Below, in pieces: positions 3,168-28,972 of a DNA stretch of 64,000 nt. The DNA comes from Macrostomum lignano (lineage: Eukaryota). The DNA is taken from the NCBI GenBank assembly GCA_002269645.1, contig NIVC01001438.1:120327-184326 (forward strand), read 5' to 3'. Position 1 is the first letter of the stretch. Every line of letters starts with the position of its first letter. The notes under the pieces are model-generated. The model was given only the letters and a program-made list of their open reading frames with translations. It was not told the origin of the DNA and searched no databases. Both the position numbers and the translations under genes were made by a program.

Positions 3168-3185
3168 CGGAGGGCATCCAGAGTG

Positions 3186-5708: not shown

Positions 5709-5710
5709 AA

Positions 5711-6025
5711 TGTAGCAAGAACGGAGGCAGGACACAAAATTGGACTTTGAGCCTTTACCGCCCAATCACAAGCTTGCACAGCTGCCTGCTTACTAGGCAC
5801 ACTCTAAAGCATAGCCAGTAACAGTTCGAGCTATGATTCAGCATTTATTGGACTCACCATCGAGCTAAGGCGATGAAATTCAGCTGATATAAAGTTACGA
5901 ATATAAAGTATTGAACGAAACGAAAATATACGAGTATTATTACATTGCGATGCGATTACTTTGCTTTACTTAACACACGCCTCGAGTTGGCACTAATTTA
6001 AATTACGAAATTAAGGTGTACTACA
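5711..6025 (-). repeat. 5' LTR (315 bp)
   Basis: TGTAG at 5711 and CTACA at 6021-6025 form a 5-bp inverted terminal repeat; directly adjacent to the PBS. Confidence 0.75.
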
Positions 6026-6031
6026 TTATTC

Positions 6032-6730
6032 CAAGGACGACTTAAGTAGAAGGACGGGAAACCTCGTTTCTTAGAAAATTTTTGAAGGCACTTTTTCCCG
6101 AAAAAAATACACTACGGAGATAGGAAATTTTCATTTTTTCAGCACAAAAATTGCTATTACTTTTGATAGGAGGCAGATCCAGTGCTCATCTTTTGATATG
6201 TTGTGCCTTTTTTATTGCTCTATCGATATTTATAAAGCTTTTCGTTCAGAAAATTAGGATTATGTGTCAATTTTTTATTCTACGTACATTTCCTGTATCT
6301 GAAAATCACAAAAATGCATGACACAGCTCCAATATTTGCTTTTATGAACCTGTTTTATCATCTCTGTTACGAATATTTGCTAAACAGTCAGTTAAGAATG
6401 ATAAAATAGACTCATGAAACCAAAGAGCCGAGCCGTGGCATTCTAATGTATTTCAATCACAAGACACGTGAAAATATACGGAGAATAAAAAATTTACATA
6501 GAATCCTAATTTTCTGAACTAAAAGCTTTATAAATATCGATAGAGCAATAAAAAAGGCACAACATATCAAAAGATGAGCACTGGATCTGCCTCCTATCAA
6601 AAGTAATAACAATTTTTGTGCTGAAAAAATGAAAATTTCCTATCTCCGTAGTGTATTTTTTCGGGAAAAAGTGCCTTCAAAAATTTTCTAAGAAACGAGG
6701 TTTCCCGTCCTTCTACTTAAGTCGTCCTTG
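6032..6730. mobile_element. MITE with ~250-bp TIRs and 8-bp TSD (P- or hAT-superfamily-like)
   Basis: Ends CAAGGACGACTTAAGTAGAAGG...CCTTCTACTTAAGTCGTCCTTG; near-perfect TIRs; TSD CATTATTC at 6024-6031 and 6731-6738. Confidence 0.9.
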
Positions 6731-8128
6731 CATTATTCCTAGAAGCAGAACTCGGAGATTTAGTTTGGTAGCAGATGTGATTGACGTTTAGTACCTGTAC
6801 TTTGCAACTTTTAGGAATGAATTAGGCATTTTGTGTAGCCGGGTTTAGTTATGTTGATCAGATATGTATAATCATTAGTTTTTATGTTTGGTTTTCTTTG
6901 TGATCTGTATGTTATACGATATTGATATTGGGCATTGTCGGATTTGTCGCATTGACATTGGTATGATGTGGATTATGGTTTACGCCAAACTATACACTAG
7001 TAACTAGCCTATGACTTTGTTTGACTATGGGCATATTTCAATGATTGTGGTTTTAAAATCTATGAAAACTGGTTTTCGTTTTTTTAAAATTTTAGCAGGA
7101 AGCATAGTCCTTTAAAATTAATTTGTATACAGAGAACATGCCACTTGCCAGTATACTTTTCTTTTTATTTTGTGTTATTTCTAGGCTTTAGCTCATCGAC
7201 ATTGTCAATTGTCATCTATTTTTATATTGTAGGTCTATTGCCTAGGATGTAAGTCTTGTATTAGGCATCAACAAATTTATATTTTAAGGTAGCCACTCCA
7301 AGTCTTTCAATTCAAAAGTTATGGTTATTTTAATTTTTTATATACATTTTTTGTCAAAAATTCACTTATTTAAATGACTTGCAGGAAATTAATTAACTAA
7401 ACTTAGTTTGCAAGCATTTTTACAAGAGGTTTTCAAAAAGTATTGGCAACAGGCTACTAAAATCTAGTGCAAGCTCATTATTCTAAAAGTAAATGTTTAT
7501 AGTAGTCTTTCTATGTAGTCTCCGCTATGCTCTATGCACTTCTGATGCATCCATAGCCACAAATCAAAGGCGCTGTAGTATTCCAATTCAGTTAATGCCC
7601 TCAACTCTGAATTGATAGCACATGCCAGGTCTTGCAGCCTCTGAAATTGGTACCCAGCCAGCATTTCTTGATGGAGCTTGATCCTCTATCACCTATGCTA
7701 AGTCAGCATAGATTTTGGTAGTGTTTTCTCCAAGTTGAGTGTGCATGAAGATGTAGAAGTGCATGTTTTCTAAGCTGATATTTTCCATATTTTGTCAAAA
7801 GCTAAAACATAAGTATGGTTAGGTGTGAATTATGCAATAACAGGTAAAGCTATTGAGCTGAAAATTTATATGGTGGTCTCAAGCATGTTACTAAAATATC
7901 CCTAAAATTTAGTGTGTTTTGCTTGAGCCAAAGTATATCTGCATATGTAGGCCCCCTAGTTGCCAAAACTTTTTTAATGCCCCTTGTAGCAGTTATATAC
8001 TCATTTGCTAAAAAATCCTTCTGACCCCATATTTTCAAGCAAATTTGGCATAGTTTTTAAAATGTACAAAAAACACAAATTTGCTACCTGTTTATAAATA
8101 AAGCTTAAGATCAACATTTATGGCGAAA

Positions 8129-8166
8129 ACCAACGCGTTTCAACCCACTAGGGCCGTCGTCAGGGT
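8129..8166 (-). ncRNA. Minimal type I hammerhead ribozyme (Penelope-type)
   Basis: Exact reverse complement of 8410-8447. Confidence 0.75.
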
Positions 8167-8230
8167 ATATTTTATCACTGAACTGAGTTTTTGTTGCGCA
8201 TACATTTTGTTTTTTTTTTACATCTGTTTG

Positions 8231-8275
<45 letters not shown>

Positions 8276-8409
8276 TTCTCGCTTAACTCCAACCCCTAGT
8301 TTTTTTATGTTTTTCGTACATTGGTTACCCTCCCGTTTTCAATTTGACACTTGAGATAGTACAATCGTTTGCTTATTTATATTGAGTGTTTCGTTCAGTG
8401 ATAAAATAT

Positions 8410-8447
8410 ACCCTGACGACGGCCCTAGTGGGTTGAAACGCGTTGGT
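8410..8447 (+). ncRNA. Minimal type I hammerhead ribozyme (Penelope-type)
   Basis: ACC-CUGACGA-C-GGCCC-UAGU-GGGUU-GAAAC-GC-GUU-GGU: catalytic core CUGAnGA...GAAA, stem II with GU pairs, palindromic stem III AACGCGUU, stem I ACC/GGU, cleavage triplet GUU. Confidence 0.75.
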
Positions 8448-9717
8448 TTTCGCCATAAATGTTGATCTTAAGCTTTATTTATTTGCTATTAATTAAGCGA
8501 GCAACTCTACCACAATGCTACCTGTTTGCTACACAAAACTTGTCACACAAAATCTTTGCTTTTTGGATTACAATAAAATGTTACTATCAACAATTGAATA
8601 TCAATTTTTAGCAATTGAAATGTGCCTATAGTATAGTCAGCTTGGATAGAGTACAATTAGGTCCACAAGAGGGTCCCATCATGTTTTTGAACTTTAAGCA
8701 CTTATAACTTTTAAACTATAATAGATAGAACAAAGCTGCAAAAAATAAGTCCAACTTCTAGTCATATATTTGTCACATAGCTGTTTATGAATTCTAAAGC
8801 AACTAAACATATAATCAGAACATAGACTATGTTGATGGTCATTTTTTATTACCAAACAACTGTCAGTATAGTTTATGCTCTGCTATGTGTTCAGTTGTTT
8901 TACAATTCATAAGCAGCTATGTGAAAAAGATAGAACTAGAAGTTTGACATATATTTCTTTTTGCAACTTTTTTCTATCTATTATGATATCCTAAATGTCC
9001 TATTTTTTTATCCTAGATGCTAATTATTTAATTAAAACATTTTTGTCAGAGTTTATCAAACACATTTGATTGATCAAGTGTTCTTACTAGCTGATATGTT
9101 TTGATAAAAATTGGTTTTAAAAATATTTAAAAATTAATAGCAAAGTGTATCAAATTGGACTTCTTGAAGTTTAGGTAGATGAATCTCTTAGACTATGTAA
9201 AACTCATATCTAAATATATCTAGCAACAAATATTCAATTTGCCAAAAATAATCTTGGACCAAACCCCATTGCCTTAAATATGTTGTACATAAGTCTATTA
9301 GGTAATTATCCCTAGCAGTTTAGCAGTCTAGTAGTAATGCTAAGAGTAGATCTTTTAAAAGTATTCATAAGTATAGTTTTGGAGTTTTGGTTTTGGATAA
9401 GGGATTGCTATATGAACTGTTGGATTCAATGCCCTCAAAAAGTACATATAGTTATGTCGATCAAATTTATTTTATCTAGACTATAGGGTCATGAAATAGC
9501 TTGTATCAAATAAAAGTTAAAGTTTTGCAGAGAAGGCAAATAGATAGGAAGGGAACTAGATAGCCAAGCATGTGCACAAGGGGGCCTATTTAAAAAAGTA
9601 CCAAAAAAAGATCAGTGAAAAAACATTGGTGTATTGCAAGTTTGAACCCTAAATTGCAAAATCTACTGTCAATATTTTAGACGAATTAAACCAAGAATTA
9701 ATTAATCATCAACAAAA

Positions 9718-12700
9718 ATGGTTTCATCTGCAAGCTGGCAGCAGTGTCAATCACTGTCAAAAATGTCAGTTCGCATTGTGGCACTGAGCTGCATTGCCAG
9801 TCTGCTGCTATCAGTATCGCCTGCAGTCAATGCACTGCACATCCGCGGTACATGGGACAGCAGTCGGTTCTACCTGTTCCTAGCCAAGTTCGGCATACAG
9901 AAAACTGTATTGGAGAGCATGGCGGCCACTCGTGGCTATGTCTATGGCAATGTCACCCTGGCGGGCCAGCGGCAGGCCAGTTCTGGCCGTCAGAGAGCTC
10001 CCGTCACTCTTGTGGTGGTTGACAGCGAATACTTTCAAGTATGCTCTATAGACAGTTGCTGTTGATTTTGCATCATACAGATACAGTTTACAGATTACTC
10101 AATCAAATTTTACAATTGTTAGAAGGCTTGAAACTCCAAGAATCTCCAATAATTATGAAATCACCTCTAACCCTTGCCTTGAGGATCGCTGAGACAATCA
10201 CCTCTCTAACCCTGGAGAATCGCTGAGACAATCACCTCTCTAACCCTGGAGAATCGCTGAGACAATCACCTCTCTAACCCTGGCCTTGAGGATCGCTGAG
10301 ACAATTACCTCTCTAACCCTGGAGAATCGCTGAGACAATCACCTCTCTAACCCTGGAGAATCGCTGAGACAATCACCTCTCTAACCCTGGAGAATCGCTG
10401 AGACAATCACCTCTCTAACCTTTGAGAATCGCTGAGACAATCACCTCTCTAACCCTGGAGAATCGCTGAGACAATCACCTCTCTAACCCTGGAGAATCGC
10501 TGAGACAATCACCTCTCTAACCCTGGCCTTGAGAATCGCTGAGACAATCACCTCTCTAGCCCTGGAGAATCGCTGAGACAATCACCTCTCTAACCCTGGA
10601 GAATCGCTGAGACAATCACCTCTCTAACCTTTGAGAATCGCTGAGACAATCACCTCTCTAGCCCTGGAGAATCGCTGAGACAATCACCTCTCTAACCCTT
10701 GAGAATCGCTGAGACAATCACCTCTCTAACCCTAGCCTGGAGAATCGCTGAGACAATCACCTCTCTAACCCTTGAGAATCGCTGAGACAATCACCTCTCT
10801 AACCCTTGAGAATCGCTGAGACAATCGCCTCTCTAGCCCTGGAGAATCGCTGAGACAATCACCTCTCTAACCCTTGAGAATCTCTGAGACAATCACCTCT
10901 CTAACCCTTGAGAATCGCTGAGACAATCACCTCTCTAACCCTGGCCTTGAGAATCGCTGAGACAATCACCTCTCTAACCCTGGCCTTGAGAATCGCGCCT
11001 GACAGCCGCACCAAACGCGCACTCCCCAGGACCTGTACACAAACTCGTCGCGCCAGCCGCACAATGACGAGTCCTGCCGCAGGATGTTCAACAAGATCGA
11101 CCGACTGGCCTGGCATCCGCAGTGCAGGCAGCAGGGCAAGGAGGACTTCTTGCGATCCGTGCCCTGCCCGACTGGCCGCCTGTGTCCGGAGGAGGACGAG
11201 CCGTCCAGGGTGATCCCTGGCTGGCAGCTCACCTATGCCATACAGGACACGAAGCAGCCCAGATACTGGTATGATTGGGATGGCTTTGAGTGTTGAAATA
11301 TCTCTGAAGCATCATTGTTAGTGTCAGGTGTAGCATTTTAATCCAAAAATATCTCATCGGATGTCAAGATGGGTGTTTTAATCCCAAAATATCTCATCGG
11401 ATGTCAAGATGGGTGTTTTAACCCCAAAATATCCCATCAGATGTCAAGATGGGTGTTTTAACCCCAAAATATCCCATCGGATGTCAAGATGGGTGTTTTA
11501 ACCCCAAAATATCCCATTGGATGTCATGATGGGTGTTTTAATCCCAAAATATCCGATTGGATGTCAAGATAAGCATTTTAATCCCAAAATATCCCATCGG
11601 ATGTCAAGATGGGTGTTTTAACCCCAAAATATCCCATTGGATGTCATGATGGGTGTTTTAATCCCAAAATATCCCATTGGATGTCAAGATAAGCATTTTA
11701 ATCCCAAAATATTCCATCAGATGTCTGGAATAACATCGAAAATTCTAAACTATCCGTATGGGATGATTTTTTATCTTCCCTATGGGATAACACCAGTGTG
11801 CTTCCATCCGCAGGTACCTCAGCCTGGTAGCCTGCAGTCTCAACCTGGACAATTGCCAATGGGAGGCCACCCACACCGGCTCGTCCTCCCTGACGCTCGC
11901 CTACGATCTCTGGCTGGTGAACGGCGCGCCAAGCCAGCGCCATGTGAACAAGCTGGAGCACCAGTTCTCCTTTGACGAGCACGACATTCTGGAGATCTAC
12001 GGCGTGTTTCTCATGCTGTACGCCGCCCTGGCCGGGGCCGTCCACGCTAAACTGCTGCGCCGGCAGGAGCCCTTCACCTGGGGTGTGGCGGCGCAGTGCT
12101 GGCTGGAGGTGAGCCAATCTAAGCATTTTTGATGAAATATTTTCTGGTAGAAACCTAGCAACTAAGTTTTGTTGCATTCTCAAAATTTGAAACACTCGGA
12201 ACTGCGAATCCCCATGGAGCTCTAAATAATCTGGAAAATCCCCGGGAATTCCCTATAAATAGTAGTTAATGCAATCTGGGAAATCCGAGGAATCCCAAAG
12301 AAAATTTTCTCGGTAATCCTAAAGGAACTTATCTCTGGAATCCGGGGAATCCCATAGAGTATTATCTGGGAAATCCCGGAAAACCCTAAGAATATTATCT
12401 GGGAAATCCCGAGAATCCCGAAGAATATTATCTGAGAACACCCGGGAATCCTAAAGAACTTTTATGGGGAATCACGAGAATCCCAAAGATACTTCTCTTG
12501 GGAATCCTTTTAATCCCTAAAAAACTTATCCCAGGAATTCTCCCAACACTCGTGACTAATCCTTGAGAATCCCAAGTCGGCAGTTGGGCAATTTAACGAA
12601 TCGAATTACATATCCCCACCATCCTATCAAAGGTGGCCGGCGCCTTTCTCTGCTGCGTTCACCTGGCCAAATTTGCCGGCGACGGCGTCGGCGCCTCGGG

Positions 12701-14090
12701 CCTGTGGGCCGCCGGCGAGCTGCTCCGTCGATGGGCGGACGCCGTGTTTATCCTGCTGCTGATCCTGGCCGCCAGGCTCGGTCTGCAGGGCCGGCCGGAC
12801 CCGCTGGGCACGGGCATCCTGCTGGCCTCGTTCCTCACCGTTAGCGCCGGCTTCTACCTGTGGTCTCTGGCCGAGGTGAGTGGGCTGGACTTCTGAGAAT
12901 TCATAAATTTGGAATAAGATTCTCGAAGCTTTTTATCTGTCTCAGGGTGAGATTCTCGTGTCTCTTATCCGTCTCAGGGTGAGATTCTCATGTCTTTTAT
13001 TCGTCTCAGGGTGAGATTCTCGTGTCTTTTATCCGTCTCAGGGTGATATTCTCGTGTTTTCTATCCTTCTCAGGGGAGATTCTTAGGGCTTCTTATCAGT
13101 CTCAGGGTGAGATTCTCGTGTCTTTTATCCATCTCAGGATGAGATTCTCGGGCTTTATATCCGTCTCAGGCTGAGATTCTCGTGTCTATTATCCGTCTCA
13201 ATGTGAGTTTCTCGAAGTTTTTTGTCTCAGGATGAGATTCTCGGACTTTATATCCGTCTCAGGCTGAGATTCTCGTGTCTTCTATCCGTCTCAAGGGAGA
13301 TTCTCGAGCTTCTTATCAGTCTGAGGGTGAGATTGTCGTGTATTTTATCCATCTCAAGGTAGGATTCTCGTGTCCTTTATCTGTCTCAGGGTGAGATTCT
13401 CATGATTTTGATCCACACCGCGGTGAGATTGTCATGTTTTTTCAATCGAAGAATGAGATTCTAATCATGTCTTTTTCCATCTCGGGTGAGTCTCATGCCT
13501 TTCATCCGGGTTCTCTTTAGCTGTTATTCTTGTGCCCAGTCCATGTCTCTAAGATTCTCATTACATCATCTTTCACCCTGGGTGAGATTTTCATAATCCC
13601 TGCGTACCGCATCCCAGCGAGCCCCAAAACTCCCCTAACCCAGGTGAGCCAGGTAGAAGATGTTGGCGTATTCGACACGGTGCCCTCCTGTCTGCTGCTG
13701 GCCCTGCGGTTCCCCTTGGTCTGCTGGTTTCTGGCCGAGCTGCCCGGCCGGCCCGGCCGAGATTTCGGCCGAATCGATGTGCTGCAGTTCGCGGCCGGCT
13801 TCCTACTGTGGCTGGTGGCCCTGCCCATCCTGGTGCTGGTGTCGGAGACTCAGGTTTCGGCTCTGTGGCGTCAGAAATGCGTTCTCAGCGTCAGCTATGG
13901 CACTAACTTCGTGGCCGCTAGCGCCTTTATCTACGCCCTGTTCACCAGCCAGCAGCACGATGGGGCTAAGTATGACTACCTCATGACTGCGGAGGAGTCC
14001 CCGGAACACCGGTCACGGCTGAGGGACGGCCCTGCCGCATCCGGCAATGGCAGCGCCGGCATAGCGGCAGAGGAGGATAAGCTGAACTAA
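9718..14090 (+). CDS. TMEM145/GPR180-family 7TM membrane protein (5 exons)
   Basis: Exons 9718(or 9763)-10038, 11030-11268, 11814-12108, 12633-12875, 13644(or 13653)-14090; all GT-AG with compatible phases. Signal peptide, LAKFG..KT..GY.YGN.T, DFLRSVPCPTGRLC, RYWYLSLVAC, EHQFSFDE and seven hydrophobic segments. Confidence 0.8.
10160..10996. repeat. Minisatellite, ~30/36-bp unit GAGAATCGCTGAGACAATCACCTCTCTAACCCT(G), in intron 1
   Basis: Tandem array read directly from the sequence. Confidence 0.95.
11340..11720. repeat. 40-bp minisatellite in intron 2
   Basis: Unit ATCCCAAAATATCCCATCGGATGTCAAGATGGGTGTTTTA. Confidence 0.9.
12220..12560. repeat. Degenerate GGAATCCC-based repeat in intron 3
   Basis: Recurrent ...CTGGGAAATCCCGAGAATCCC... 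units. Confidence 0.6.
12940..13500. repeat. ~31-bp minisatellite in intron 4
   Basis: Unit TCCGTCTCAGGGTGAGATTCTCGTGTCTTTTA-like. Confidence 0.85.
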
Positions 14091-14499
14091 CAATACTGGT
14101 GATTAGTAATGACACCGTTGATTTTTATTTGAGACCGTCCTAGTCATACATTAAATGTCTCGGGGTAGAGATAGGGGTGTCTTGGTAGAGATTGGGTGTC
14201 TTGGTAAAGATTGGGGTGTAACTGGCAAAATTTAACTACGAGTATGTTTTGGTTTTTTTTACCACAGTTTGATGCGTTGCCATCAATTTTTTTCTAATTA
14301 CCAAACGATATTATAATTCGGAACCGTTAGTTTTATTTTCAGCTGGTCCGACGGAGCAATTTGCACGTGTTTATTATCAATCTAGTTGTGCTCTGTTCTG
14401 GCAGTCTTTCAAGCAGAGTCTGTACTTAAGCTTAGCAATTTTCTGCTTATCGTCGATTGAAAAAAATGCAAAAGGTTTTTTGCAATAGTTAGATAGGTG

Positions 14500-15430
14500 T
14501 AGGGCGGAGTGAGGTGGATATAAAGCGGAGTGAGTTGGGTGTAAGGCGGAGGGAGGTGGGTGTAAGGCGGAGGGAGGTGGGTGTAAGGCGGAGGGAGGTG
14601 GGTGTAAGGCGGAGGGAGGTGGGTGTAAGGCGGAGGGAGGTGGGTGTAAGGCGGAGGGAGGTGGGTGTAAGGCGGAGGGAGGTGGGTGTAAGGCGGAGGA
14701 GGTGGGTGTAAGGCGGAGGGAGGTGGGTGTAAGGCGGAGGGAGGTGGGTGTAAGGCGGAGGGAGGTGGATGTAAGGCGGAGGGAGGTGGATGTAAGGCGG
14801 AGGGAGGTGGGTGTAAGGCGGAGGGAGGTGGATGTAAGGCGGAGGGAGGTGGGTGTAAGGCGGAGGGAGGTGGATGTAAGGCGGAGGGAGGTGGGTGTAA
14901 GGCGGAGGGAGGTGGATGTAAGGCGGAGGGAGGTAGGTGTAAGGCGGAGGGAGGTGGATGTAAGGCGGAGGGAGGTAGGTGTAAGGCGGAGGGAGGTGGA
15001 TGTAAGGCGGAGGGAGGTGGGTGTAAGGCGGAGGGAGGTGGATGTAAGGCGGAGGGAGGTGGGTGTAAGGCGGAGGGAGGTGGATGTAAGGCGGAGGGAG
15101 GTGGGTGTAAGGCGGAGGGAGGTGGATGTAAGGCGGAGGGAGGTGGGTGTAAGGCGGAGGGAGGTGGGTGTAAGGCGGAGGGAGGTGGGTGTAAGGCGGA
15201 GGGAGGTGGATGTAAGGCGGAGGGAGGTGGGTGTAAGGCGGAGGGAGGTGGGTGTAAGGCGGAGGGAGGTGGGTGTAAGGCGGAGGGAGGTGGGTGTAAG
15301 GCGGAGGGAGGTGGGTGTAAGGCGGAGGGAGGTGGGTGTAAGGCGGAGGGAGGTGGGTGTAAGGCGGAGGAGGTGGGTGTAAGCCGAGTGAGGTGGGTGT
15401 AAGCAGAGTGATGTGGATGTAAGGCGGGGT
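14500..15430. repeat. 21-bp G-rich minisatellite
   Basis: Unit GGAGGGAGGTGGGTGTAAGGC. Confidence 0.95.
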
Positions 15431-16304
15431 GAGAGTTAATCAGATCAAGCCTCAATTAAGTGGACATTCCAAATAATTTAAAAAAATGACCCATCAATGC
15501 TCAATTGAAATACTCCACTATATTTTTGTTTCACAAATAATGCTTGCAATAATGCTTTTATGCGTCGCTAATATCTAAACATGTACATAAATACTAGAAT
15601 CAAGTCAAGAGTCAAACAGTTGCTTATTCCGTGGCATAAAAATTACAACTTAACCAATTATGCTGCAATGTTTGTTATATGAAAATTCACTTCCTGATTT
15701 AGAAATATACCCGGCTGTCAGAGTCTATACTCCGTAAGCCTATTTTCATTCCAAAGCTTAAATATTGGATAAATGGCTACAAACATGCAATTCTTTTTTA
15801 CTGACCTTCAGAATGGATGCTTTGTTTTTATCAGTCTCAGGGTGACTCGTTTTACTCCTTTCGGTATTATTTATAATTCGTCTATTAACACTGAACTGGC
15901 ACCAAATAAAACTTTTATATGATAATTTGCCGATATGTTGCGTTAATAACATAACTGGGCATGGTTTTGCAGGGATTAAAAATCAGGCAAAAATTTTTGC
16001 TGTGCCGGCACTGTGTGGCATATGAATTCTGTATAACTGCTGCTAATTAGCGGTGAATAAATTCCGTTACCGGAAAAATACTTTACGGCTTCATTGACTG
16101 AGGTTTGGCAATGCTTGTCTGAAATAATTCTTTAATAAAACAAAAATATTTTCTTTTCACGTCAAATACTTTAAGTAGAAATAAACGCTTTTTGTCGGAA
16201 AAATTTGCCACTTCTGCAATAAAATGCCGCAAATGTAGCAGAAATCGGGTATAAAATGAACTTTATACATCCATGACTGCGGTGCGGTCCGGAAGGCTTG
16301 GTTC

Positions 16305-16341
16305 GACGGTCTCTTACTGCGAAGACTCAATTTATTGCATG
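16305..16341 (+). ncRNA. Genomic copy of the Macrostomum spliced-leader exon followed by GT (SL RNA gene variant, pseudogene or retrocopy 5' end)
   Basis: (GA)CGGTCTCTTACTGCGAAGACTCAATTTATTGCATG matches the M. lignano SL as recalled, ends in the flatworm-typical AUG and is followed by GT at 16342-16343. Confidence 0.75.
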
Positions 16342-17885
16342 GTTAACTGCGCCACACCATCCGGGTGCAGTTGCCAAAACCTTCATCACATCAAGCCTGA
16401 TTACTTGACCGCACCTTTTTGCAAGTTTTACCTGCTTTTTAGTTGCCGAAAACTGCACAAAGTGTTGGGGGACGGGTTAGCGACTGTGGCAGTGGACCAG
16501 GCTCGATTCCTAGTAGTTAAGCTAGCTTGGTAATAATATCGCTTCGTGCAATTACGATCTCAAACTAGTCGTGAGTCATTACGTTGAATCGGCGTAGGAA
16601 TTGAATTTTGGCTTAACTTTAACGACAAGAAATTGTTAATACCCGCATGCAGTTTTCTGGTACTCATTTGGTCTCTTAACTTTCAATCGTCATTCATTTG
16701 CTGGGAGGTGGGGCTGGGGTTTAACAAGCGCTTAGCCTGAACTGCGCAAGGCATCGGGATCGGAATCATGAGTTTGTTTGTTATTGTATATCATTTCCCA
16801 CGCCTATACTGTATTATTACTGTAGGTCGCGGGTTCGAGTCCCTTACTATTGATCTGCAGCCGATAATGGAGGCCGCCGGTTTTTGCAGAAACGTGAATT
16901 CATCAACGAGGTGAGTGCGTTTTCCTGCTTTTAGCGATAAATGCATAATATCTCTCACCTTCTGACCCTTTGTGGAAATCAATATTGTGTCTCAGGGCAC
17001 CACAGTGCCTGCGGCGCCAAAATGAGTGCCTGCGGCGCCAAAATGAGTGCCTGCGGCGCCAAAATGAGTGCTAACAACACCAATTCTCAAAATAATGCCC
17101 ACGTGTAGGAACTTAGTCAATCATGTACATGTAGAATTCTTGGTTTTGTCCCGGCCCCCCCCCCTACCACCAAAAAATCCATGGGCTGGTACGAGCGTAC
17201 ATGGGGGAGTACGCAAGCACTGAATGAGGGATTTCGCCATTTGTGGAAAATCCGTGCTAGAAACAAAGCGTACTAAAGAGACTGGAGCAACTGAAATTTC
17301 GCCTGAACTTAGTCTGCATGCCGGCCTCCATTAATTAGCATTTCATGATTTCATGAGAAAATTACTTGATAAACTTGCGATATTGGGAATTCAGTGCTAA
17401 AATAACCGAAGACTTCCTTCTGTTTTATCTTCCCATGACTCACCATATAGTAGGAAATAGCCACAGAATTTGAAAGCTAATATTAGCGTCGATAATAACG
17501 AGCTGAGAGATTTATCCTTGGTGAGTCACACCGACTGAGCAGCAAATCCGGTACCGTCCCAGACTCTCCGCTTCATAATTAGTCTATTCTCGCAATTTCA
17601 TCATCATAATTCTAAAAATAGGATCTGGCGTTGAAATTGCAAACAGATTAAGCTCCAGAGCGCGTCCAAATTAGCATGTAAGTTTTTTCTTTTTATACTT
17701 CGTATTTTCGGATAAAATTTACGATTCGCAATGGTTTTTAGCTCGTATCAAAGATTTATTCACGTAATGTCAGAATCAAACAAGCACTCCCTCACTGGGC
17801 ATGGCATTGCACTTCCCGCATCTTTGTGCGATCTCAAGGTCGAGAAACACACCCCATAAAGCACGAAGTCGTAACCTGCTATATT

Positions 17886-18087: not shown

Positions 18088-19499
18088 GGGTCCACGACGT
18101 TTGCCTGCGGGACGTTTGCCAGCCGACGTTTGCCTGCGGGACGTTTGCCAGCCGACATTTGCCAGCCGACGTTTGCCAGCCGACGTTTGCCAGCCGAAGT
18201 TTGCCTGCCGGACGTCTGCCTGCGGGACGTTTGCCAGCCGACATTTGCCAGCCGACTTTGCCAGCCGACTTTGCCAGCCGACGTTTGCCAGCCGACGTTT
18301 GCCAGCGGGACGTTTGCCAGTCGGAAGTTTGCCTGCCGGACGTTTGCCAGCCGACGTTTGCCAGCCGACGTTTGCCTGCCGGAAGTTTGCCAGCCAAAAT
18401 TTGCTAGCCAATATAAAGCCAGTCAGTGAAAAATTTGATACTGAAATATTCGCAGTTTAGCGGTTTGACAAAAACCGTTTTTACTCCAACTTTTTGACGG
18501 TTATTCGCAATTTTGCATATATACAAGTTTGAAATGCAAAATATAAAAATTATGCAATTTATATAGATATAAATTATTATGCAATTTATATAGATTTACA
18601 TCTAATATCCAGTTTAACAACGATTTTCTTTGAATGTGAAAATATTGTTTACTTTTGACAATTGTGTATCGTTTTTCCCAGTTTGAGATGTTTGATTTTT
18701 GATGTGCGAAAGAAGACGCGCAAATTACAACGGGGATCTCCAGCGATTAAGTTATGAGGCAAACAAAAAGAGCTGCTGAGCGGTAATTCTGGCTCATATA
18801 TTTCTCAGTTCATTGGGAGATCCAAAAGTAAGCAAATTGATTCCAATTCTGTTGTATTACTACTCAAGTAAGCCAGGAAACCGCGATCTCAACGTACATG
18901 TGTAGACGAGTCGAATGCGGTATGTTTTTATAGTAAGCTATACAGCTGAATAGCCAGACAAGCCACCAGTAGCAAGCTAGTCGGATAGCAAGCGCTAGAC
19001 ACTACGTATGCAAAGCTTAGTCACGCCAAGGACTACTAAAGTAGAAGTACGCAGCACTCGAAATCTATGAAAAATTTTTTGAAGGCCATAGGGAGAAAGG
19101 AAGTTTTCATCTTTTCAGCACAACAATTGTTATTGCTTTCATACGAGGCAAACCCAATGTTCATCTTTTGATATGTTGTGCCAAAATCTTTGGTAAACTA
19201 GATATTAGACGTTAGACTGATGAACTGCATAATTTATATATTTTGCTTTCAAACTTGTATATATGCGAATAACCGTCAAAAAGTTGGAGTAAAAACGGTT
19301 TTTGTCAAACCGCTAAACTGCGAATATTTCAGTATCACATTTTTCACTGACTGGCTTTATATTGGCTAGCAAATTTTGGCTGGCAAACGTCGGCTGGCAA
19401 ACGTCCCACTGGCAAACGTCGGCTGGCAAACGTCGGCTGGCAAACGTCGGCTGGCAAATGTCGGCTGGCAAACGTCCCGCAGGCAAACGTCGCTATCCC
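18088..19499. mobile_element. Foldback-type non-autonomous DNA transposon with repeat-array TIRs
   Basis: Ends GGGTCCACGACGTTTGCC...GGCAAACGTCGCTATCCC; subterminal GACGTTTGCCAGCC arrays in opposite orientation plus ~170-bp inner inverted arms; TSD GTACACTC at 18080-18087 and 19500-19507 (a 9-bp reading is possible). Confidence 0.85.
19027..19182 (+). mobile_element. Diverged TIR fragment related to the 6032-6730 MITE
   Basis: CAAGGACTACTAAAGTAGAAG...TCATCTTTTGATATGTTGTGCC is colinear with 6032-6207. Confidence 0.75.
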
Positions 19500-20119
19500 G
19501 TACACTCGCAGCCTGCTAGTCACGTGATCTCAGTCTCTGCTATGTCGTAGCACTGCACATATTCCTATTGTGTCTGTATTGCTCAAACTACATAGAAATT
19601 GAAAGCTTAAATTCATTTTTCGTACCGTCGGAATTCATCTGTGAATCGGCACTCATTTTGCACGCAGAGATAGCTTTAGGAGAAGACAATGCGGGCGTAG
19701 GAAGCCACGACGAGTTCCGCTTCAATACTGAACAAAACCTCTCAGGGTCAACAATCAGATAAAGTCATTTTAAGTCCAACTGTCGCCCTTCCCGCTGAGA
19801 CACGCAGCTTGTCGGTCTCACTGCGCTTGAGAGGGGGATGATAAATTTTTCCTTGTTCTTTTTTAACTTAGTCGCACAATTCCTTCCCGCTTCCTGTTGG
19901 TTGTCAAGCCGCCGCTATCGCGTGTGAAAGCAGAAGACTGGATGCTTGCTTTCTCTTTTATGCACTCCGGGGGCATGTAGGAGAGAGGATGAGAGGGAGG
20001 GTAGGGAAGAGGATGAAAGGGAGGCCGGGAGGGTAGGGAAGAGGATGAGGAGGGGAGTGAAGAGGTTGAGATGTTGAGAGGGAAGAGGCATATAGATCGA
20101 GTTGAGAAGGGAGTGCTGA

Positions 20120-20580
20120 GATCCCTCTCATCCCCTCCCCTGCCATCCCTCTCATCCCCTCCCCTGCCCTCCCTCTCATCCCCTCCCCTGCCCTCCCTCT
20201 CATCCCCTCCCCTGCCCTCTCTCTCATCCCCTCCCCTGCCCTCCCTCTCATCCCCTCCCCTGCCCTCCCTCTCATCCCCTCCCCTGCCCTCCCTCTCATC
20301 CCCTCCCCTGCCCTCCCTCTCATCCCCTCCCCTGCCCTCCCTCTCATCCCCTCCCCTGCCCTCCCTCTCATCCCCTCCCCTGCCATCCCTCTCATCCCCT
20401 CCCCTGCCCTCCCTCTCATCCCCTCCCCTGCCATCCCTCTCATCCCCTCCCCTGCCCTCCCTCTCATCCCCTCCCCTGCCCTCCCTCTCATCCCCTCCCC
20501 TGCCATCCCTCTCATCCCCTCCCCTGCCCTCCCTCTCATCCCCTCCCCTGCCCTCCCTCTCATCCTCTTCCCTACCCTCC
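20120..20580. repeat. 24-bp pyrimidine-rich minisatellite
   Basis: Unit CCCTCTCATCCCCTCCCCTGCCCT. Confidence 0.95.
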
Positions 20581-21099
20581 CTCCCAGAATGAATGCATGT
20601 GATTCCCTTCTCAATTTCTCGCCATTGCAGAAACCCAATATAAAGGCCAAAAATCAGCTTATTCGAGAAGCAATGCAGCGCTGTTTAAAAGTGTACGTGG
20701 GGCTTACCACGGTTAGCAGGCAGTCGTAAAGAAATATCAAAGGAATTACCCCCCACACTCCCAAAATATTGGGAGCGGAGTCAAATCCCCTGACGTTTTC
20801 TTTGCTTCAGCAAAAGCAGAAGACGAAGCCATTCCGTTTCTACTTACTGGCCTTCCATTTTTAGTCCCTGTAAATAACAGCTGTAGTCCGGACTCCGGAG
20901 GTGCCGCGGGGACTCCAGTGGAATGAGGAGTGGGGGCCGGGCCTGTGAGGCGTGGGTCTGTGTGGGCGTTTCGCTGAGTTCCGTCCCTTCCCCGCCCCAC
21001 CCCCACTGCTCCCAAAACCGCCATGGATTTCTATGAAACAATGTGGACTGGAAGCGGACCATAGGCCGCTGAGGTCGGCTAACTCCGGTCCGCGGGCCG

Positions 21100-21730
21100 G
21101 GTCGCCATCACAAGCTCGAAAAATCATATCGTCGAAACAGGGCTCCATCACAAGCTCGAAAACTCACAAGCTCGAAAACTCACATCGTCGAAAATTTTAG
21201 CAACCACCATCACAAGCTCGAAAAGTCATAAGCTCGAAAAATCATATCGTCGAAAAGTCTAGCAACCATCATCATAAGCTCGAAAAATCATATCGTCGAA
21301 AAGTTTAGCAACCACCATCACAAGCTCGAAAAATCATATCGTCGAAAAGTTTAGCAACCACCATCACAAGCTCGAAAAGGCACAAGCCCTAACCCCAAGG
21401 CACCAGTACCCTAGCCTAACCCTGAACCATAACCCTAACCCCAACCCTAACCTAACCCTAAACCCTAACTTAAAGGCACTAGTTCTAACCCCGACCCTAA
21501 CCCTAAGCCCTAACCCTAAGGCACAAGCTCTAACCCTAACCCTATTCAAGCTTGTGATGATGGTTGCTAGACTTTTCGACGATATGATTTTTCGAGCTTA
21601 TGACTTTTCGAGCTTGTGATGGTGGTTGCTAAACTTTTCGACGATGTGATTTTTCGAGCTTATGACTTTTCGAGCTTGTGATGGTGGATGCTTTTCGACG
21701 ATGTGATTTTTCGAGCTTGTGATGGGCCCC
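21100..21730. mobile_element. Foldback element with ACAAGCTCGAAAA arrays and a degenerate (CCCTAA)n core
   Basis: Inverted arrays ~21105-21378 and ~21547-21725; GG...CC ends; 9-bp TSD CGCGGGCCG at 21091-21099 and 21731-21739. Confidence 0.85.
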
Positions 21731-27312: not shown

Positions 27313-27432
27313 TGCAGGCACGCACTCATGCACTCGCTCACACAGGGTGTACAGCAGCCCTGACTTTCTAATCATCAGGCATGTACAGTCTCTGTGCCAT
27401 GGGGGCTGGCCCTCATGGCTGCGAATCGGGCC
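27313..27432 (-). mobile_element. 3' half of a tRNA-derived SINE
   Basis: Aligns by eye with 43701-43820 and with the reverse complement of ~47615-47715. Confidence 0.65.
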
Positions 27433-27470
27433 AGTTGTCAAAATCTCCCGCCGAACCGCCCAGCCTCCAG

Positions 27471-28972
27471 ATGCTCACCGAAGTGTCCGTAGCCGTCAGC
27501 TTCGTCACCTCCTTCCTGTACGGCAAGCTGCCCCGTCGGCGGGTGCTCATGCTTGGCGAGGAGCTGGACAAGGCCATCCAGGCCAAGTTCCGGGGTCACT
27601 GGTACCCGGACCAGCCGCTCAAGGGCACGGCCTACCGCTGCCTGAAGCTGTCCGGCGACAACCCCAACCTGCTGCTGTTCGAGGCGGCGAGGGAGATCGG
27701 GCTAGAGGCTGCTGAGATACTTCAGCACCTGCCGGACAGCCTCACCCTGTGGATTGATCCCGGGGAAGTGTCCTACCGGATCGGGGAGAAGGGTGAGGCC
27801 GGCTGTTCAGCCTGTTTTTGGGGGATCCATTTTTCGGAAATCTTCAATCCTTAAATTAATAAAGTTTATATCATCAAATCCAAAGAAAGATTCCATACCC
27901 AAACTCCAAATCCCTAAGCTCCAAATCCCTAAGCTCCAAATCCCTAAGCTCCAAATCCCTAAGCTCCAAATCCCTAAGCTCCAAATCCCTAAGCTCCAAA
28001 TCCCTAAGCTCCAAATCCCTAAGCTCCAAATCCCTAAGCTCCAAATCCCTAAGCTCCAAATCCCTAAGCTCCAAATCCCTAAGCTCCAAATCCCTAAGCT
28101 CCAAATCCCTAAGCTCCAAATCCCTAAGCTCCAAATCCCTAAGCTTCAAATCCCTAAGCTCCAAATCCCTAAGCTCCAAATCCCTAAGCTCCAAATCCCA
28201 AAACGGACTCCCGCCAGGAGCGGTATCGGTGCTCTACACTGACAAAGGTCACGACGAGTCTCCCAGCGAGTTCAACCCGGAGGCCCAAGACTTCGTCCCA
28301 GCCTCGGAGCAGCTGTTGCTGGCGCAGAACTTCGCCCAGCTGGGGCTCGGTCAGCTGTACAGCTCGCAGCAGCAGCAGCAGCAGGACCTCATCAACTACA
28401 GCCAGTACATGCTGCAGAAGAGCAGCTCGGCGCCCAATTTCTTCACCGCGGCCGCCTTCGCCCAGACCAAATTCGGCAGCACGAAGCTGCGCCAGCAGAC
28501 TCGACGGACGGCCGGCGGTCGATCGAACGGCGGCGGCTTCGGGGATAGCTCCAGTCGTCGGGGTGCCGCTAGTCGAGCTGTCGGTGGCGGCGGTGGCTTC
28601 GGTGCCGTGGCCGGAGCCCCGTTGAACTTCAGCGCGCAGCAGCCACCGATTCAGGCGAGCCTCGGGCGCCACTCAACAGTCGCGGCAGCTTCGACGGCCG
28701 CCTTCAATCGCTCGGTGTCAATGTCGCCGGGAATTGGCTACTCAAGCGTAGACTGGTCGACCGGCCTTGGAGGTCCCGGAGGCAGCGACGTGGGCGGTCA
28801 GAGGCTGTCGGTGCACATCCCGACCGCTGGCGCCAGCTACCACAGCAGCAACGGTTCCAGCCGGCAGACTTCGCCGGGTGCTGCGGCTGCGGCTGCGGCA
28901 GCGGCTGCGGCAGCTGCTTCTGCTGCGTCAGCGTCTGGACGACACACCGAGCAGCTGCTGCTGGCCAATTAG
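27471..28972 (+). CDS. TOB: Tob (BTG/Tob antiproliferative family) protein, 2 exons
   Basis: Exons 27471-27792 and 28218-28972 (phase 1, GT-AG). BTG domain LPRRRV..GEEL...GHWYPDQPLKG..YRCL...LWIDPGEVSYRIGEKG; PAM2-like SEFNPEAQDFVP; Tob motif TKFGSTK. Confidence 0.9.
27895..28200. repeat. 15-bp minisatellite filling the Tob intron
   Basis: Unit CCAAATCCCTAAGCT. Confidence 0.95.

What the first reader, a model, noticed from the sequence alone, without database searches (positions are those of the whole stretch)
16296..16533. Spliced-leader exon encoded in the genome, followed by GT, a hairpin and an ORF opened by the SL AUG
Seen: 16307-16341 is CGGTCTCTTACTGCGAAGACTCAATTTATTGCATG, followed by GT, a 9-bp stem (16345-16353 / 16364-16372, one GU) and U-rich tracts (ACCUUUUUG 16413-16421) that are not a canonical Sm site. 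The terminal ATG opens a 64-codon Cys-rich ORF (MVNCATPSGCSCQN...AW*, 16339-16533). A 7-bp repeat GCTTGGT lies at 16296 and 16525. Established (recalled, not searched): this is the M. lignano SL, and flatworm SLs end in AUG that can initiate translation. The upstream bases differ from the recalled SL 5' end. Inference, three options: (a) a divergent or orphan SL RNA gene; (b) a retrocopy of a trans-spliced RNA, perhaps from a transposon, since the ORF start loosely recalls a THAP N-terminus; (c) a captured SL exon acting as a cis-donor or built-in leader.
Basis: partly seen in the sequence, partly recalled or inferred. Interest (0 to 1): 0.8.

Follow-up and report, generated by a model that had tools for sequence, protein, structure and literature searches.

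The report
Spliced-leader copy inside Y-RNA-like gene
An exact but 5'-shortened copy of the Macrostomum spliced leader lies in the loop of what looks like a small Y-RNA/stem-bulge-RNA gene, not in a spliced-leader RNA gene or a protein-coding gene. It could mislead trans-splicing annotation and may be the first Y-RNA candidate in a flatworm.

Summary
Window 16307-16341 is the published 35-nt Macrostomum spliced leader (SL), followed by GT, a 9-bp hairpin and a 64-codon ORF. The full SL is 45 nt, and only 37 nt (16305-16341) are present. A canonical SL RNA gene recovered from a metagenome (L005) shares nothing else with the locus: not the donor GTAAG, stem I, the Sm-like site or the intron. So this is not an SL RNA gene.

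The SL copy lies inside a 140-nt unit (16281-16420). Its ends form a perfect 9-bp stem, then a bulged C, then a 9-bp upper stem. The motifs CGGUCCGGA and ACUUGACCG are identical to those of nematode stem-bulge (Y-like) RNAs. The stem ends directly in T5. TATAAAA sits at -31, and a motif shared with the U12 and SL RNA promoters sits at -70. The unit folds at -52 kcal/mol (z -4.5).

Best reading: a Pol III Y/sbRNA-like gene whose variable loop captured the 5' end of a trans-spliced RNA. The ORF is spurious.

Caveats: the Rfam score is below threshold, there is a single locus, and no expression or comparative data could be obtained.

The parts
16211..16228 (+). Candidate proximal sequence element (PSE) of an snRNA-type promoter: CTTCTGCAATAAAATGCC, at -70 of the predicted start 16281.
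   Evidence: CTTCT-N3-5-AAAA occurs only 3 times in the window on both strands. One copy is here and one is at -82 of the U12 gene (39672). In L005 the motif lies at -84 of the canonical SL RNA gene. That it is a PSE is an inference.
16250..16256 (+). TATAAAA box, -31 to -25 of the predicted start. This is the geometry of type-3 Pol III promoters (U6, 7SK, Y RNA genes; established knowledge).
   Evidence: Sequence. A blind scan for a 9-bp closing stem plus T5 plus a TATA-like hexamer at -40..-20 finds only this locus in the window. Expectation in 100 Markov simulations: 0.19 without the TATA requirement, 0.0 with it.
16281..16420 (+). Predicted ~140-nt small RNA with Y RNA / stem-bulge RNA architecture: terminal stem, bulged C, upper stem, large loop, U tail.
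   Evidence: MFE -52 kcal/mol, z -4.53, 0 of 200 shuffles fold as well. Rfam RF01656 (nematode sbRNAs CeN72-3/CeN74-2) matches 16280-16415 end to end at 17.7 bits, E 0.19 for the 161-nt region but below the gathering score of 38. A literature-derived descriptor gives 1 hit in the window and 0 in 20 Mb of simulated sequence.
16281..16293 (+). 5' strand of the lower stem: GGUGCGGUC, bulged C16290, then GGA. Contains CGGUCCGGA (16285-16293).
   Evidence: Pairs perfectly over 9 bp with 16407-16415. CGGTCCGGA is identical to the 5' motif of C. elegans sbRNAs CeN71/75/77/Ce1/Ce4 (primers in PMC8477234) and to the RF01656 consensus.
16294..16302 (+). 5' strand of the 9-bp upper stem, AGGCUUGGU.
   Evidence: Pairs with AUCAAGCCU at 16390-16398 (one G-U) and holds the central UG/CA step described for sbRNA and Y RNA upper stems (PMC4450293).
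16305..16341 (+). SL-derived segment: nucleotides 9-45 of the 45-nt Macrostomum spliced leader, 37/37 identical, ending in ATG.
16342..16389 (+). Rest of the loop: GT, the hairpin 16345-16353/16364-16372 (extendable to 16340-16376) and the pyrimidine-rich single strand CCAAAACCUUCAUCAC. Origin unknown; possibly the 5' end of the RNA that carried the SL.
   Evidence: Folds. No similarity to the canonical SL RNA intron. No other copy in the window.
16390..16415 (+). 3' strand of the upper stem (AUCAAGCCU), the 5-nt bulge GAUUA, and the 3' strand of the lower stem containing ACUUGACCG (16402-16410).
   Evidence: ACTTGACCG is identical to the reverse complements of the CeN75/76/77/Ce4 reverse primers. 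CeY ends ...ACTTTGACCGCTCC-TTTT; here the end is ...ACTTGACCGCACC-TTTTT.
16416..16440 (+). T5 directly after the terminal stem (16416-20), then T4 (16426-29) and T5 (16436-40): a Pol III terminator with back-ups and a La-type U tail. There is no run of 4 or more T inside 16281-16415.
   Evidence: Sequence; scan.
16339..16533 (+).
   Evidence: No Pfam family except a sub-threshold DUF hit; no THAP. No gene with this product on record. It starts in the loop of the predicted RNA and reads through its 3' stem and three T-runs.

Best explanation
Window 16281-16420(+) is a small-RNA gene of the Y RNA / stem-bulge RNA (sbRNA) kind. It would be transcribed by RNA polymerase III from an external promoter (PSE-like motif at -70, TATA at -31) and terminated at the T5 that follows its terminal stem. 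The 5' and 3' ends pair into the conserved lower stem with a bulged cytosine, which is the Ro60-binding module in Y RNAs. Above it sits a 9-bp upper stem, and the U tail would bind La. The variable loop, normally a few dozen nucleotides, is here 87 nt. It contains nucleotides 9-45 of the spliced leader, followed by GT and about 45 nt of unrelated sequence. The most economical origin is one event: a 5'-truncated cDNA or RNA-templated copy of the 5' end of an abundant trans-spliced RNA was captured in the loop-coding DNA. The SL copy is therefore a passenger. It is neither an SL RNA gene nor the first exon of a gene, and the 64-codon ORF is not a gene. Shown: the sequence identities, the fold, the motif positions, and the absence of SL RNA gene features. 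Inferred: Pol III transcription, Ro60 and La binding, and the capture mechanism.
For: (1) The SL identity is exact but 5'-truncated: 37 of 45 nt. (2) Identity to a canonical SL RNA gene (L005) stops after ATG-GT. The donor GTAAG, stem I, the hairpins and the Sm-like site are all absent. (3) 16281-16289 pairs perfectly with 16407-16415 and 16294-16302 with 16390-16398. MFE is -52 kcal/mol, z -4.53, 0 of 200 shuffles. (4) Rfam's sbRNA family RF01656 aligns end to end over 16280-16415 at 17.7 bits, with the conserved blocks CGGUCCGG and ACUUGACCG matched. The same 9-mers occur in published C. elegans sbRNA primers, and CeY has the same end architecture. Rat Y1 and human Y4 begin GGCTGGTCCGA and end ...TTGACT.G.CT. 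(5) The descriptor x5-GGTCCG...TTGACC-rc(x5)-T4 gives 1 hit in the window and 0 in 20 Mb of simulation. (6) Only one site in the window combines a 9-bp closing stem, T5 and a TATA at -40..-20, and it is this one. (7) The motif CTTCT-N3-5-AAAA, which has 3 sites in 128 kb, lies upstream of this unit, of the U12 gene and of the L005 SL RNA gene. (8) Removing 16305-16382 in silico leaves a clean 62-nt stem-bulge hairpin at -28.8 kcal/mol. (9) SL-bearing loci produced by integration of trans-spliced transcripts are documented in parasitic flatworms (PMC12582326).
Against: The Rfam score (17.7) is far below the family's gathering score (38). At whole-window, all-family scale the hit is not significant and is absent. 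Rfam Y_RNA (RF00019) gives nothing. My single-sequence CeY model ranks the locus only 3rd of 16 with filters off, and in a shifted register. A vertebrate stem-only model does not find it, although that model cannot span 135 nt. The conserved loop motif UUAUC is not present; the sequence is UUCGAC. The descriptor and the PSE motif were defined after seeing the locus. No second copy, orthologue, transcript or Ro60 gene could be examined, because the organism is absent from the searchable protein and contig collections. The insertion has no diagnostic junctions: only a 3-nt TTC repeat and no poly(A).
Confidence: 0.55

Rival explanations
1. There is no small-RNA gene here. A 5'-truncated cDNA fragment or retrocopy of a trans-spliced mRNA, possibly from a transposon, integrated into intergenic DNA. 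The flanking inverted repeat, TATA and T-run are coincidences.
For: The SL is 5'-truncated, as retrocopies usually are. Such SL-bearing integrations are reported in flatworms. The covariance-model evidence for a Y-like RNA is sub-threshold.
Against: There is no poly(A) or A-rich tail within 1.5 kb and no target-site duplication beyond a 7-mer that is part of a stem. This reading must dismiss several things as chance: a 9+9-bp stem with exact sbRNA motifs, T5 exactly at the end of the stem, a TATA at -31 and a PSE-like motif. The simulated expectation is about 0.
Confidence: 0.2
2. The chimera is functional. A Pol III Y-like scaffold displays the SL with its 5' splice site, either as a decoy or regulator for SL-binding, trans-splicing or translation factors, or as an alternative long-leader donor.
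For: The 37/37 identity, together with retention of ATG-GT, is compatible with constraint or with a very recent origin. The unit has an apparently intact promoter and terminator.
Against: There is no Sm-like site and no donor/exon stem I. GUUAAC is a poor donor, and it is sequestered in a 13-bp hairpin. The published SL consensus from transcripts carries CCGTAAAGA upstream, not GGCTTGGTTCGA. This is a single locus with no comparative support.
Confidence: 0.08
3. It is a decayed or remodelled SL RNA gene (pseudogene) that kept its PSE and most of the exon.
For: The PSE-like motif is 86 nt upstream of where a full-length SL would start (16297). In the L005 SL RNA gene the distance is 84 nt, and in the U12 gene 82 nt. 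GT follows the ATG.
Against: The exon core is 37/37 identical, while everything around it is unrelated: the first 8 exon nucleotides, the promoter-proximal 60 nt and the whole intron. Decay does not produce that pattern. The upstream alignment to L005 scores no better than shuffles (13 against 11.8 +/- 4.9).
Confidence: 0.07
4. It is a foldback element or MITE whose terminal inverted repeats enclose a captured SL fragment.
For: Imperfect terminal inverted repeats of about 22-26 nt enclose 136 nt. The window is rich in inverted-repeat elements.
Against: There is no target-site duplication at the ends (left flank ...ACTGC, right flank TTTTTG...). There is no other copy in 64 kb. The 'TIR' sequence equals the conserved Ro-binding motifs of sbRNAs.
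Confidence: 0.05
5. It is a protein-coding gene whose mRNA has a genome-encoded leader, with the SL ATG opening a Cys-rich, THAP-like ORF.
For: The ORF of 64 codons starts at the SL ATG, and MVNCATPSGC loosely recalls THAP N-termini (the resemblance is recalled, not tested).
Against: There is no THAP or other Pfam hit even at E = 10. The C-X2-4-C...C-X2-H spacing is not met by eye. No such product is on record. The ORF crosses the stem and three T-runs, and there is no downstream exon or poly(A) signal context.
Confidence: 0.02

Closest known systems
Nematode stem-bulge RNAs (sbRNAs: CeN71-77, CeN133-135, Ce1-7; Rfam RF01656 covers CeN72-3/CeN74-2) and CeY
   Same: The 5' and 3' ends are paired. 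The lower stem has a single bulged C. The blocks CGGUCCGGA and ACUUGACCG are exact. There is a 4-5-nt bulge on the 3' strand, a 9-bp upper stem with a UG/CA step, and a short U tail. The length is in the family's range: the RF01656 model is 130 nt.
   Different: The score is below the Rfam threshold. The loop-start motif UUAUC is replaced by UUCGAC. The loop carries 37 nt of spliced leader, which I have not seen reported for any Y RNA or sbRNA. The host is a flatworm; Y RNAs were reported as not found in Schistosoma in 2009 (PMC2770079).
Vertebrate Y RNAs (e.g. human Y4, rat Y1)
   Same: GGUCCG(A) near the 5' end and CUUGAC near the 3' end, a bulged C, a terminal U run, and the external Pol III promoter logic of PSE plus TATA at about -30 (promoter geometry from established knowledge).
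   Different: There is one extra G (GGUCCGGAAGG against GGUCCGAAGG). The upper-stem GUG/CAC motif is only partly kept (UUG/CAA). Rfam RF00019 and my vertebrate stem model do not detect the locus.
Canonical Macrostomum SL RNA gene (109 nt, PMC8629364; example recovered here, L005 615-723)
   Same: 39 identical bases (GA + 35-mer + GT), and a similar PSE-like motif at a similar distance upstream of the SL.
   Different: The locus lacks the first 8 exon nucleotides, the GTAAG donor, stem I, hairpins II and III and the Sm-like AGUAUUUUUAG. It has a TATA box and Y-like arms instead.
SL-bearing genomic loci from integration of trans-spliced (retrotransposon) transcripts in parasitic flatworms (PMC12582326). 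From memory only: relict SLs in dinoflagellate genes and snRNA-mRNA chimeric retrocopies made by LINE template switching.
   Same: A partial leader in the genome is the only SL RNA feature present, and it is truncated at the 5' end.
   Different: Here the leader is not attached to a recognisable LTR or LINE element or to a gene. It is embedded in the loop of a structured small-RNA unit. In template-switch chimeras the snRNA lies wholly 5' of the mRNA part, not around it.
The sequence first published as the M. lignano 'SL RNA' (Wasik 2015), later reassigned to the 5' end of gene Mlig013257.g1 (PMC8629364)
   Same: It is a genomic SL match that is not the SL RNA gene and does not fold like one.
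   Different: I could not read that sequence, so whether it is this locus, a paralogue or something else is unknown.

Membership tests
Spliced-leader RNA gene (Macrostomum type) | Complete SL exon (45 nt, GCCGTAAAGA + 35-mer) at the 5' end of the transcript | tested here: not met
   Only nucleotides 9-45 are present (16305-16341). The 8-10 nt upstream are unrelated.
Spliced-leader RNA gene (Macrostomum type) | Donor GTAAG that base-pairs with the 5' part of the exon (stem I) | tested here: not met
   The window has GTTAAC. In L005, GUAAGACACC pairs with GGUCUCUUAC; no such complement exists here.
Spliced-leader RNA gene (Macrostomum type) | Intron with two hairpins flanking an Sm-like site (AGUAUUUUUAG) | tested here: not met
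   The best local alignment of the L005 intron to 16342-16480 is the 7-mer TTTTTAG, downstream of the terminator. No family hit in Rfam.
Spliced-leader RNA gene (Macrostomum type) | snRNA-type upstream element at about -84 | tested here: inconclusive
   A PSE-like motif lies at -86 of a hypothetical full-length start, but equally at -70 of the Y-like start with a TATA at -31.
Spliced-leader RNA gene (Macrostomum type) | Leader is donated to mRNAs (reads carrying this locus's own upstream bases) | not testable with these tools
   No Macrostomum RNA-seq is reachable. Published consensus leaders carry CCGTAAAGA, not GGCTTGGTTCGA.
Y RNA / stem-bulge RNA | 5' and 3' ends paired in a terminal stem followed by a short U tail | tested here: met
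   A perfect 9-bp stem, 16281-16289 with 16407-16415, followed immediately by T5.
Y RNA / stem-bulge RNA | Conserved lower stem with a single bulged cytosine (Ro60-binding module) | tested here: met
   GGUC-C-GG; CGGUCCGGA and ACUUGACCG are identical to the RF01656 consensus and to C. elegans sbRNA primers; feature list in PMC4450293.
Y RNA / stem-bulge RNA | Upper stem of about 9 bp with a conserved (A/G)UG-CA(C/U) motif | tested here: inconclusive
   The 9-bp stem is present and has UG/CA, but as UUG/CAA, and the G-C clamps are only partial.
Y RNA / stem-bulge RNA | Loop begins with UUA(U/C)C | tested here: not met
   The loop begins UUCGAC, where the SL-derived segment starts.
Y RNA / stem-bulge RNA | External (type 3) Pol III promoter: TATA at about -30 and a PSE; T-run terminator; no internal T4 | tested here: met
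   TATAAAA at -31..-25, T5 at the end, no T4 inside. The PSE assignment is inferred from U12 and L005.
Y RNA / stem-bulge RNA | Reaches the curated score of an Rfam Y/sbRNA model | tested here: not met
   RF01656 gives 17.7 bits against a gathering score of 38. RF00019 gives no hit. Own CeY model: 10.7 bits, rank 3. The vertebrate stem model cannot span the locus.
Y RNA / stem-bulge RNA | Expressed as an RNA of about 70-140 nt bound by Ro60 and La | not testable with these tools
   No expression data or proteome of the organism is available.
Processed retrocopy of a trans-spliced mRNA | Poly(A) or LINE-type tail and target-site duplications | tested here: not met
   No A-run within 1.5 kb downstream. 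The only repeats are GCTTGGT (part of the upper stem) and a 3-nt TTC.
Processed retrocopy of a trans-spliced mRNA | Parental gene with an AG acceptor where the SL ends | not testable with these tools
   No Macrostomum genome or transcriptome is searchable by DNA. The five SL-bearing metatranscriptome contigs found have other sequences after the SL.
THAP-domain protein | C-X2-4-C-X35-53-C-X2-H zinc finger / Pfam PF05485 | tested here: not met
   No THAP hit at E up to 10. The cysteine spacing is C-X5-C or C-X1-C.
MITE / foldback transposon | Terminal inverted repeats plus target-site duplication plus multiple copies | tested here: not met
   Inverted ends are present, but there is no target-site duplication and no second copy in the window. 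Genome-wide copy number is not testable.

The most novel reading that the evidence does not exclude
A Pol III-transcribed, Ro60-type Y RNA scaffold has been co-opted to display the spliced leader with its AUG and 5' splice site. It would act as a stable SL mimic that titrates or recruits SL-specific trans-splicing or translation factors, or feeds a variant long leader into trans-splicing. This would link the Ro/Y RNA system to SL trans-splicing in flatworms.
Probability: 0.07. Interest if true: 0.85.

Novelty: new variant of a known kind. Interest (0 to 1): 0.5.

Why it matters
There are three reasons. (1) Annotation. Macrostomum pipelines trim the SL from reads and map the remainder to call trans-splice sites (PMC5730564). 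An expressed genomic SL copy would create a false trans-splice site at 16342 and a false 'trans-spliced gene' or ORF. A comparable mis-assignment has already happened once (PMC8629364). (2) Y RNAs and sbRNAs are known from vertebrates, nematodes and a few other groups, and were reported as not found in Schistosoma. A credible flatworm candidate with its promoter gives a seed for finding the family and the Ro RNP in a regeneration model. It also suggests a PSE consensus for Macrostomum small-RNA promoters, which would be useful for U6-type expression cassettes. (3) If the SL in the loop proves conserved, it would be a new way of using a Y RNA loop. If it is not conserved, it is a clean example of RNA-derived filler captured inside a small-RNA gene.

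Tried and rejected
- **Exact-product look-ups.** Neither the 86-aa nor the 64-aa ORF is on record.
- **Neighbour-gene homology search.** I queried the GPR180-like exon to find the source contig and homeologous loci. There were no hits, so the organism is not in that collection, and I did not spend further large searches.
- **Rfam at gathering thresholds.** Only U12 was found, elsewhere in the window. A whole-window E-value scan loses the sbRNA hit among chance matches to repeats.
- **tRNA-like elements.** ARAGORN finds none, despite B-box-like GGTTCGA motifs at 16300, about 16500 and 16829.
- **Second SL-like site.** GGTCTCTTA at 16669 is at chance level (score 18).
- **Canonical SL intron.** It is absent from the window.
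- **THAP reading of the ORF.** No Pfam support.
- **Poly(A), TSD and MITE hallmarks.** Not found.
- **Own covariance models.** The single-sequence CeY model is weak: it gives the only hit with default filters, but rank 3 with filters off and a shifted register. The vertebrate stems-only model is uninformative because its hits cannot span 135 nt. A mixed CeY/hY4 model was abandoned because MAFFT misaligns the 3' arms.
- **PSE-like site at 9535(-).** No obvious gene lies downstream.
- **Upstream similarity to the L005 SL RNA gene.** Beyond the motif there is none: score 13 against shuffles at 11.8 +/- 4.9.
- **Wasik 2015.** The paper could not be read.
Full report
**1. The observation.**
Window 16307-16341(+) reads CGGTCTCTTACTGCGAAGACTCAATTTATTGCATG. 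It is the only copy in the window at up to 3 mismatches, with none in 100 shuffles. This is exactly the 35-nt leader used for M. lignano (PMC8629364). GT follows. The 9-bp stem 16345-53/16364-72 with one G-U, the tract ACCTTTTTG at 16413-21, the 64-codon ORF 16339-16533 and the two GCTTGGT copies at 16296 and 16525 are all as described.

**2. The leader is longer than 35 nt, and the copy is truncated.**
Transcript-derived consensus leaders are CCGTAAAGA + 35-mer in M. lignano (PMC5173321). They are GCCGTAAAGA + 35-mer (45 nt) in M. cliftonense and 43 nt in M. hystrix (supplement of PMC10468722). The window has ...GGCTTGGTTC before GA + 35-mer, so only leader nucleotides 9-45 (16305-16341) are present. 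A local alignment of the 45-mer scores 74 here, against 25 or less anywhere else. Because the leader is identical in three species, the species of the window cannot be told from it.

**3. Comparison with a real SL RNA gene.**
In five contigs of one sample (Ga0316592) the leader sits at the contig end, followed by five unrelated coding sequences. These are trans-spliced mRNAs.

The sixth, L005, carries the leader internally: GCCGTAAAGA + 35-mer | GTAAGACACCGGTGATCCAATTCTGGATCAGTATTTTTAGCAGCCCTTTCATGGGCTTCC. It has the GTAAG donor and a length of about 109 nt. It folds into three hairpins, with the donor paired to GGUCUCUUAC of the exon and an Sm-like AGUAUUUUUAG between hairpins II and III. This is just as Ustyantsev and Berezikov describe the M. 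lignano gene.

Aligned to it, the window is identical for GA + 35-mer + GT and unrelated on both sides. The best match of the canonical intron near the locus is the 7-mer TTTTTAG.

**4. What surrounds the leader.**
A permissive Rfam scan of 2 kb around the locus gave one structured, end-to-end match. It is RF01656 (nematode ceN72-3/ceN74-2) over 16280-16415, at 17.7 bits (gathering score 38). E is 2.3 for 2 kb and 0.19 for the 161-nt region. CeN72 and CeN74-2 are stem-bulge RNAs, the nematode homologues of Y RNAs (PMC4450293).

The score alone is weak, and at whole-window scale the hit disappears. The alignment nevertheless exposed an architecture that holds up to direct inspection:
- GGUGCGGUC (16281-89) pairs perfectly with GACCGCACC (16407-15).
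- C16290 is bulged.
- GG pairs with CU/UU.
- AGGCUUGGU (16294-302) pairs with AUCAAGCCU (16390-98).
- A 5-nt bulge, GAUUA, sits on the 3' strand.

RNAfold gives -52 kcal/mol for 16280-16420, z = -4.53, and 0 of 200 shuffles fold as well.

The blocks CGGUCCGGA and ACUUGACCG equal the Rfam consensus. They also equal the published primer sequences for C. elegans CeN71/75/76/77/Ce1/Ce4. CeY (GGGCTCGGTCCGAG...ACTTTGACCGCTCC-TTTT) has the same ends and folds with the same bulged C. Rat Y1 and human Y4 start GGCTGGTCCGA and end ...CTTGACTAGTCT and ...TTTGACTGGCTTTTT.

**5. Promoter and terminator.**
The stem is followed at once by T5 (16416-20), then T4 and T5. There is no T4 inside the unit. TATAAAA lies at 16250-56, which is -31 of G16281.

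I ran a blind scan of both strands of the window for three things together: a perfect closing stem of at least 9 bp, T5 within 2 nt, and a TATA-like hexamer at -40..-20. It finds this site and no other. Markov simulations expect 0.19 stem+T5 sites and 0.0 with the TATA requirement.

A literature-based descriptor (5 nt, GGTCCG, 46-220 nt, TTGACC, the complement of the 5 nt, T4) gives one hit in the window and none in 20 Mb of simulated sequence. The bare motif pair would occur about 0.8 times per window, so the added pairing and T-run carry the weight.

CTTCT-N3-5-AAAA occurs three times in 128 kb:
- at 16211, which is -70 of the unit;
- at 39672, which is -82 of the U12 snRNA gene found by Rfam at 39754-39914 (88.7 bits);
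- at 9535(-), with no evident gene downstream.

The same motif is at -84 of the SL RNA gene in L005. I read it as the PSE of Macrostomum snRNA-type promoters. With the TATA box it gives the PSE + TATA geometry of type-3 Pol III genes (established knowledge for U6, 7SK and Y genes). This is inference, and the motif was defined post hoc.

**6. Negative and weak tests, stated plainly.**
- Rfam Y_RNA (RF00019) gives no hit.
- A covariance model built from the single CeY sequence finds the locus as its only hit with default filters: 16294-16419, 10.7 bits, E 1.5, in a shifted 5' register. With filters off it is third of 16, behind a palindromic repeat.
- A stems-only model from human Y4 and rat Y1 does not find it. 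That model's hits are no longer than about 59 nt, so it cannot span the 135-nt unit, and the test is uninformative.
- The conserved loop motif UUAUC is not present. The loop begins UUCGAC, exactly where the leader-derived part starts.

**7. The ORF and the THAP idea.**
The ORF begins in the loop, then reads through the 3' stem and all three T-runs. It has no Pfam match apart from a sub-threshold DUF, and no THAP hit even at E = 10. It lacks the C-X2-4-C spacing and is not on record as a product. I consider it spurious.

**8. Origin of the leader in the loop.**
Deleting 16305-16382 in silico leaves a clean 62-nt stem-bulge hairpin at -28.8 kcal/mol. One insertion into a pre-existing Y-like gene therefore suffices. 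The 5' truncation and the presence of non-SL-RNA sequence after the ATG fit a cDNA or RNA-templated copy of the 5' end of a trans-spliced RNA. Integration of SL-bearing transcripts is documented for parasitic flatworms (597 loci, PMC12582326).

No poly(A), no target-site duplication beyond TTC and no parent could be shown, so the mechanism is inferred. The first GCTTGGT copy is simply the 5' strand of the upper stem, and the second is best taken as chance.

The alternative of a remodelled SL RNA gene draws on the PSE lying 86 nt upstream of a hypothetical full-length leader start. It would, however, require everything except the 37-nt core to have been replaced while the core stayed 37/37 identical.

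**9. Limits.**
No paralogue, orthologue, transcript or Ro60 gene could be examined. The Wasik 2015 paper could not be read. That paper's 'SL RNA' was later reassigned to the 5' end of Mlig013257.g1 and may be this or a similar locus.

**10. Verdict.**
The leader copy is real but is not an SL RNA gene, a cis-donor or the start of a protein. It most likely sits as a captured passenger in the loop of a Pol III-type Y/sbRNA-like gene (16281-20). That gene has a PSE-like element (16211-28), a TATA box (16250-56) and a T5 terminator. My confidence is about 0.55 for the whole statement. It is higher, about 0.7, for 'a structured small-RNA gene of sbRNA architecture', and about 0.95 for 'not an SL RNA gene'. 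The locus is of moderate interest. It is a plausible first flatworm Y-RNA candidate with an unprecedented loop content, and a concrete trap for SL-based annotation. It rests on one locus and on sub-threshold family scores.

Noticed in passing
window 39754-39914 (+): A full-length U12 minor-spliceosomal snRNA gene (Rfam RF00007, 88.7 bits, E 5e-16), with the motif AACCTTCTTACGAAAAC at -85..-68.
   Followed up: partly
window 16211-16228, 39669-39686; L005 528-545: A shared upstream motif, CTTCT-N3-5-AAAA(C), lies before the Y-like unit, the U12 gene and an environmental SL RNA gene. It has only 3 sites in 128 kb of window sequence. It is a candidate PSE consensus for Macrostomum snRNA-type promoters.
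   Followed up: partly
L005 615-723 (+) (Ga0302322_100095745): A canonical-looking Macrostomum-type SL RNA gene in a public metagenome contig. It has the 45-nt exon, a GTAAG donor, three hairpins and the Sm-like site AGUAUUUUUAG. Just upstream, GCCGTAAA is duplicated (CGCCGTAAACTCTTTGCCGTAAAGA).
   Followed up: partly
L001-L004, L006 (Ga0316592 contigs): Five contigs begin with the Macrostomum leader followed by different coding sequences. This means trans-spliced flatworm mRNAs are present in an environmental metatranscriptome.
   Followed up: no
window 405-5765 (-): A Ty3/gypsy-type LTR retrotransposon with two long open frames: gag plus aspartic protease (859 aa) and RT, RNase H and integrase (920 aa). 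It is apparently intact (Pfam).
   Followed up: partly
window 9520-9545 (-): The third copy of the PSE-like motif (TTTGCCTTCTCTGCAAAAC) resembles the one at 16204-16224. No structured RNA or TATA at the expected spacing was seen downstream.
   Followed up: partly
window 16300-16306, 16500-16510, 16829-16839 (+): Three B-box-like motifs (GGTTCGA, GGCTCGATTCC, GGTTCGAGTCC) lie within 550 nt. ARAGORN finds no tRNA, and Rfam gives only a 13-nt T-loop match. They may be remnants of a tRNA-derived SINE, or chance.
   Followed up: partly
window 14409-15455; 19958-20650; 50150-51230; 52720-53500; 57016-59200; 61270-61900: Numerous minisatellites, including a unit of about 21 nt at 14.4-15.5 kb, an 8/12-nt unit at 52.7 kb and a 31-nt unit with about 69 copies at 57 kb. 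They produce long spurious ORFs and chance Rfam miRNA-like hits.
   Followed up: no
window 6027-6735; 8094-8482; 18111-19492; 21145-21692: Several long inverted repeats: 216 nt at 92% complementarity, 90 nt at 100%, 163 nt at 88% and 140 nt at 96%. They could be foldback or MITE-like elements.
   Followed up: no
window 11900-14090 (+); 27381-28972 (+); 40697-43386 (-); 49735-50079 (-): Host genes flank the locus: a GPR180/TMEM145-like membrane protein ending at 14090, a BTG/Tob-family gene, a GAS2 plus calponin-homology gene and an RRM (CELF-like) exon. The SL/Y-like unit is intergenic, about 2.2 kb downstream of the first.
   Followed up: partly
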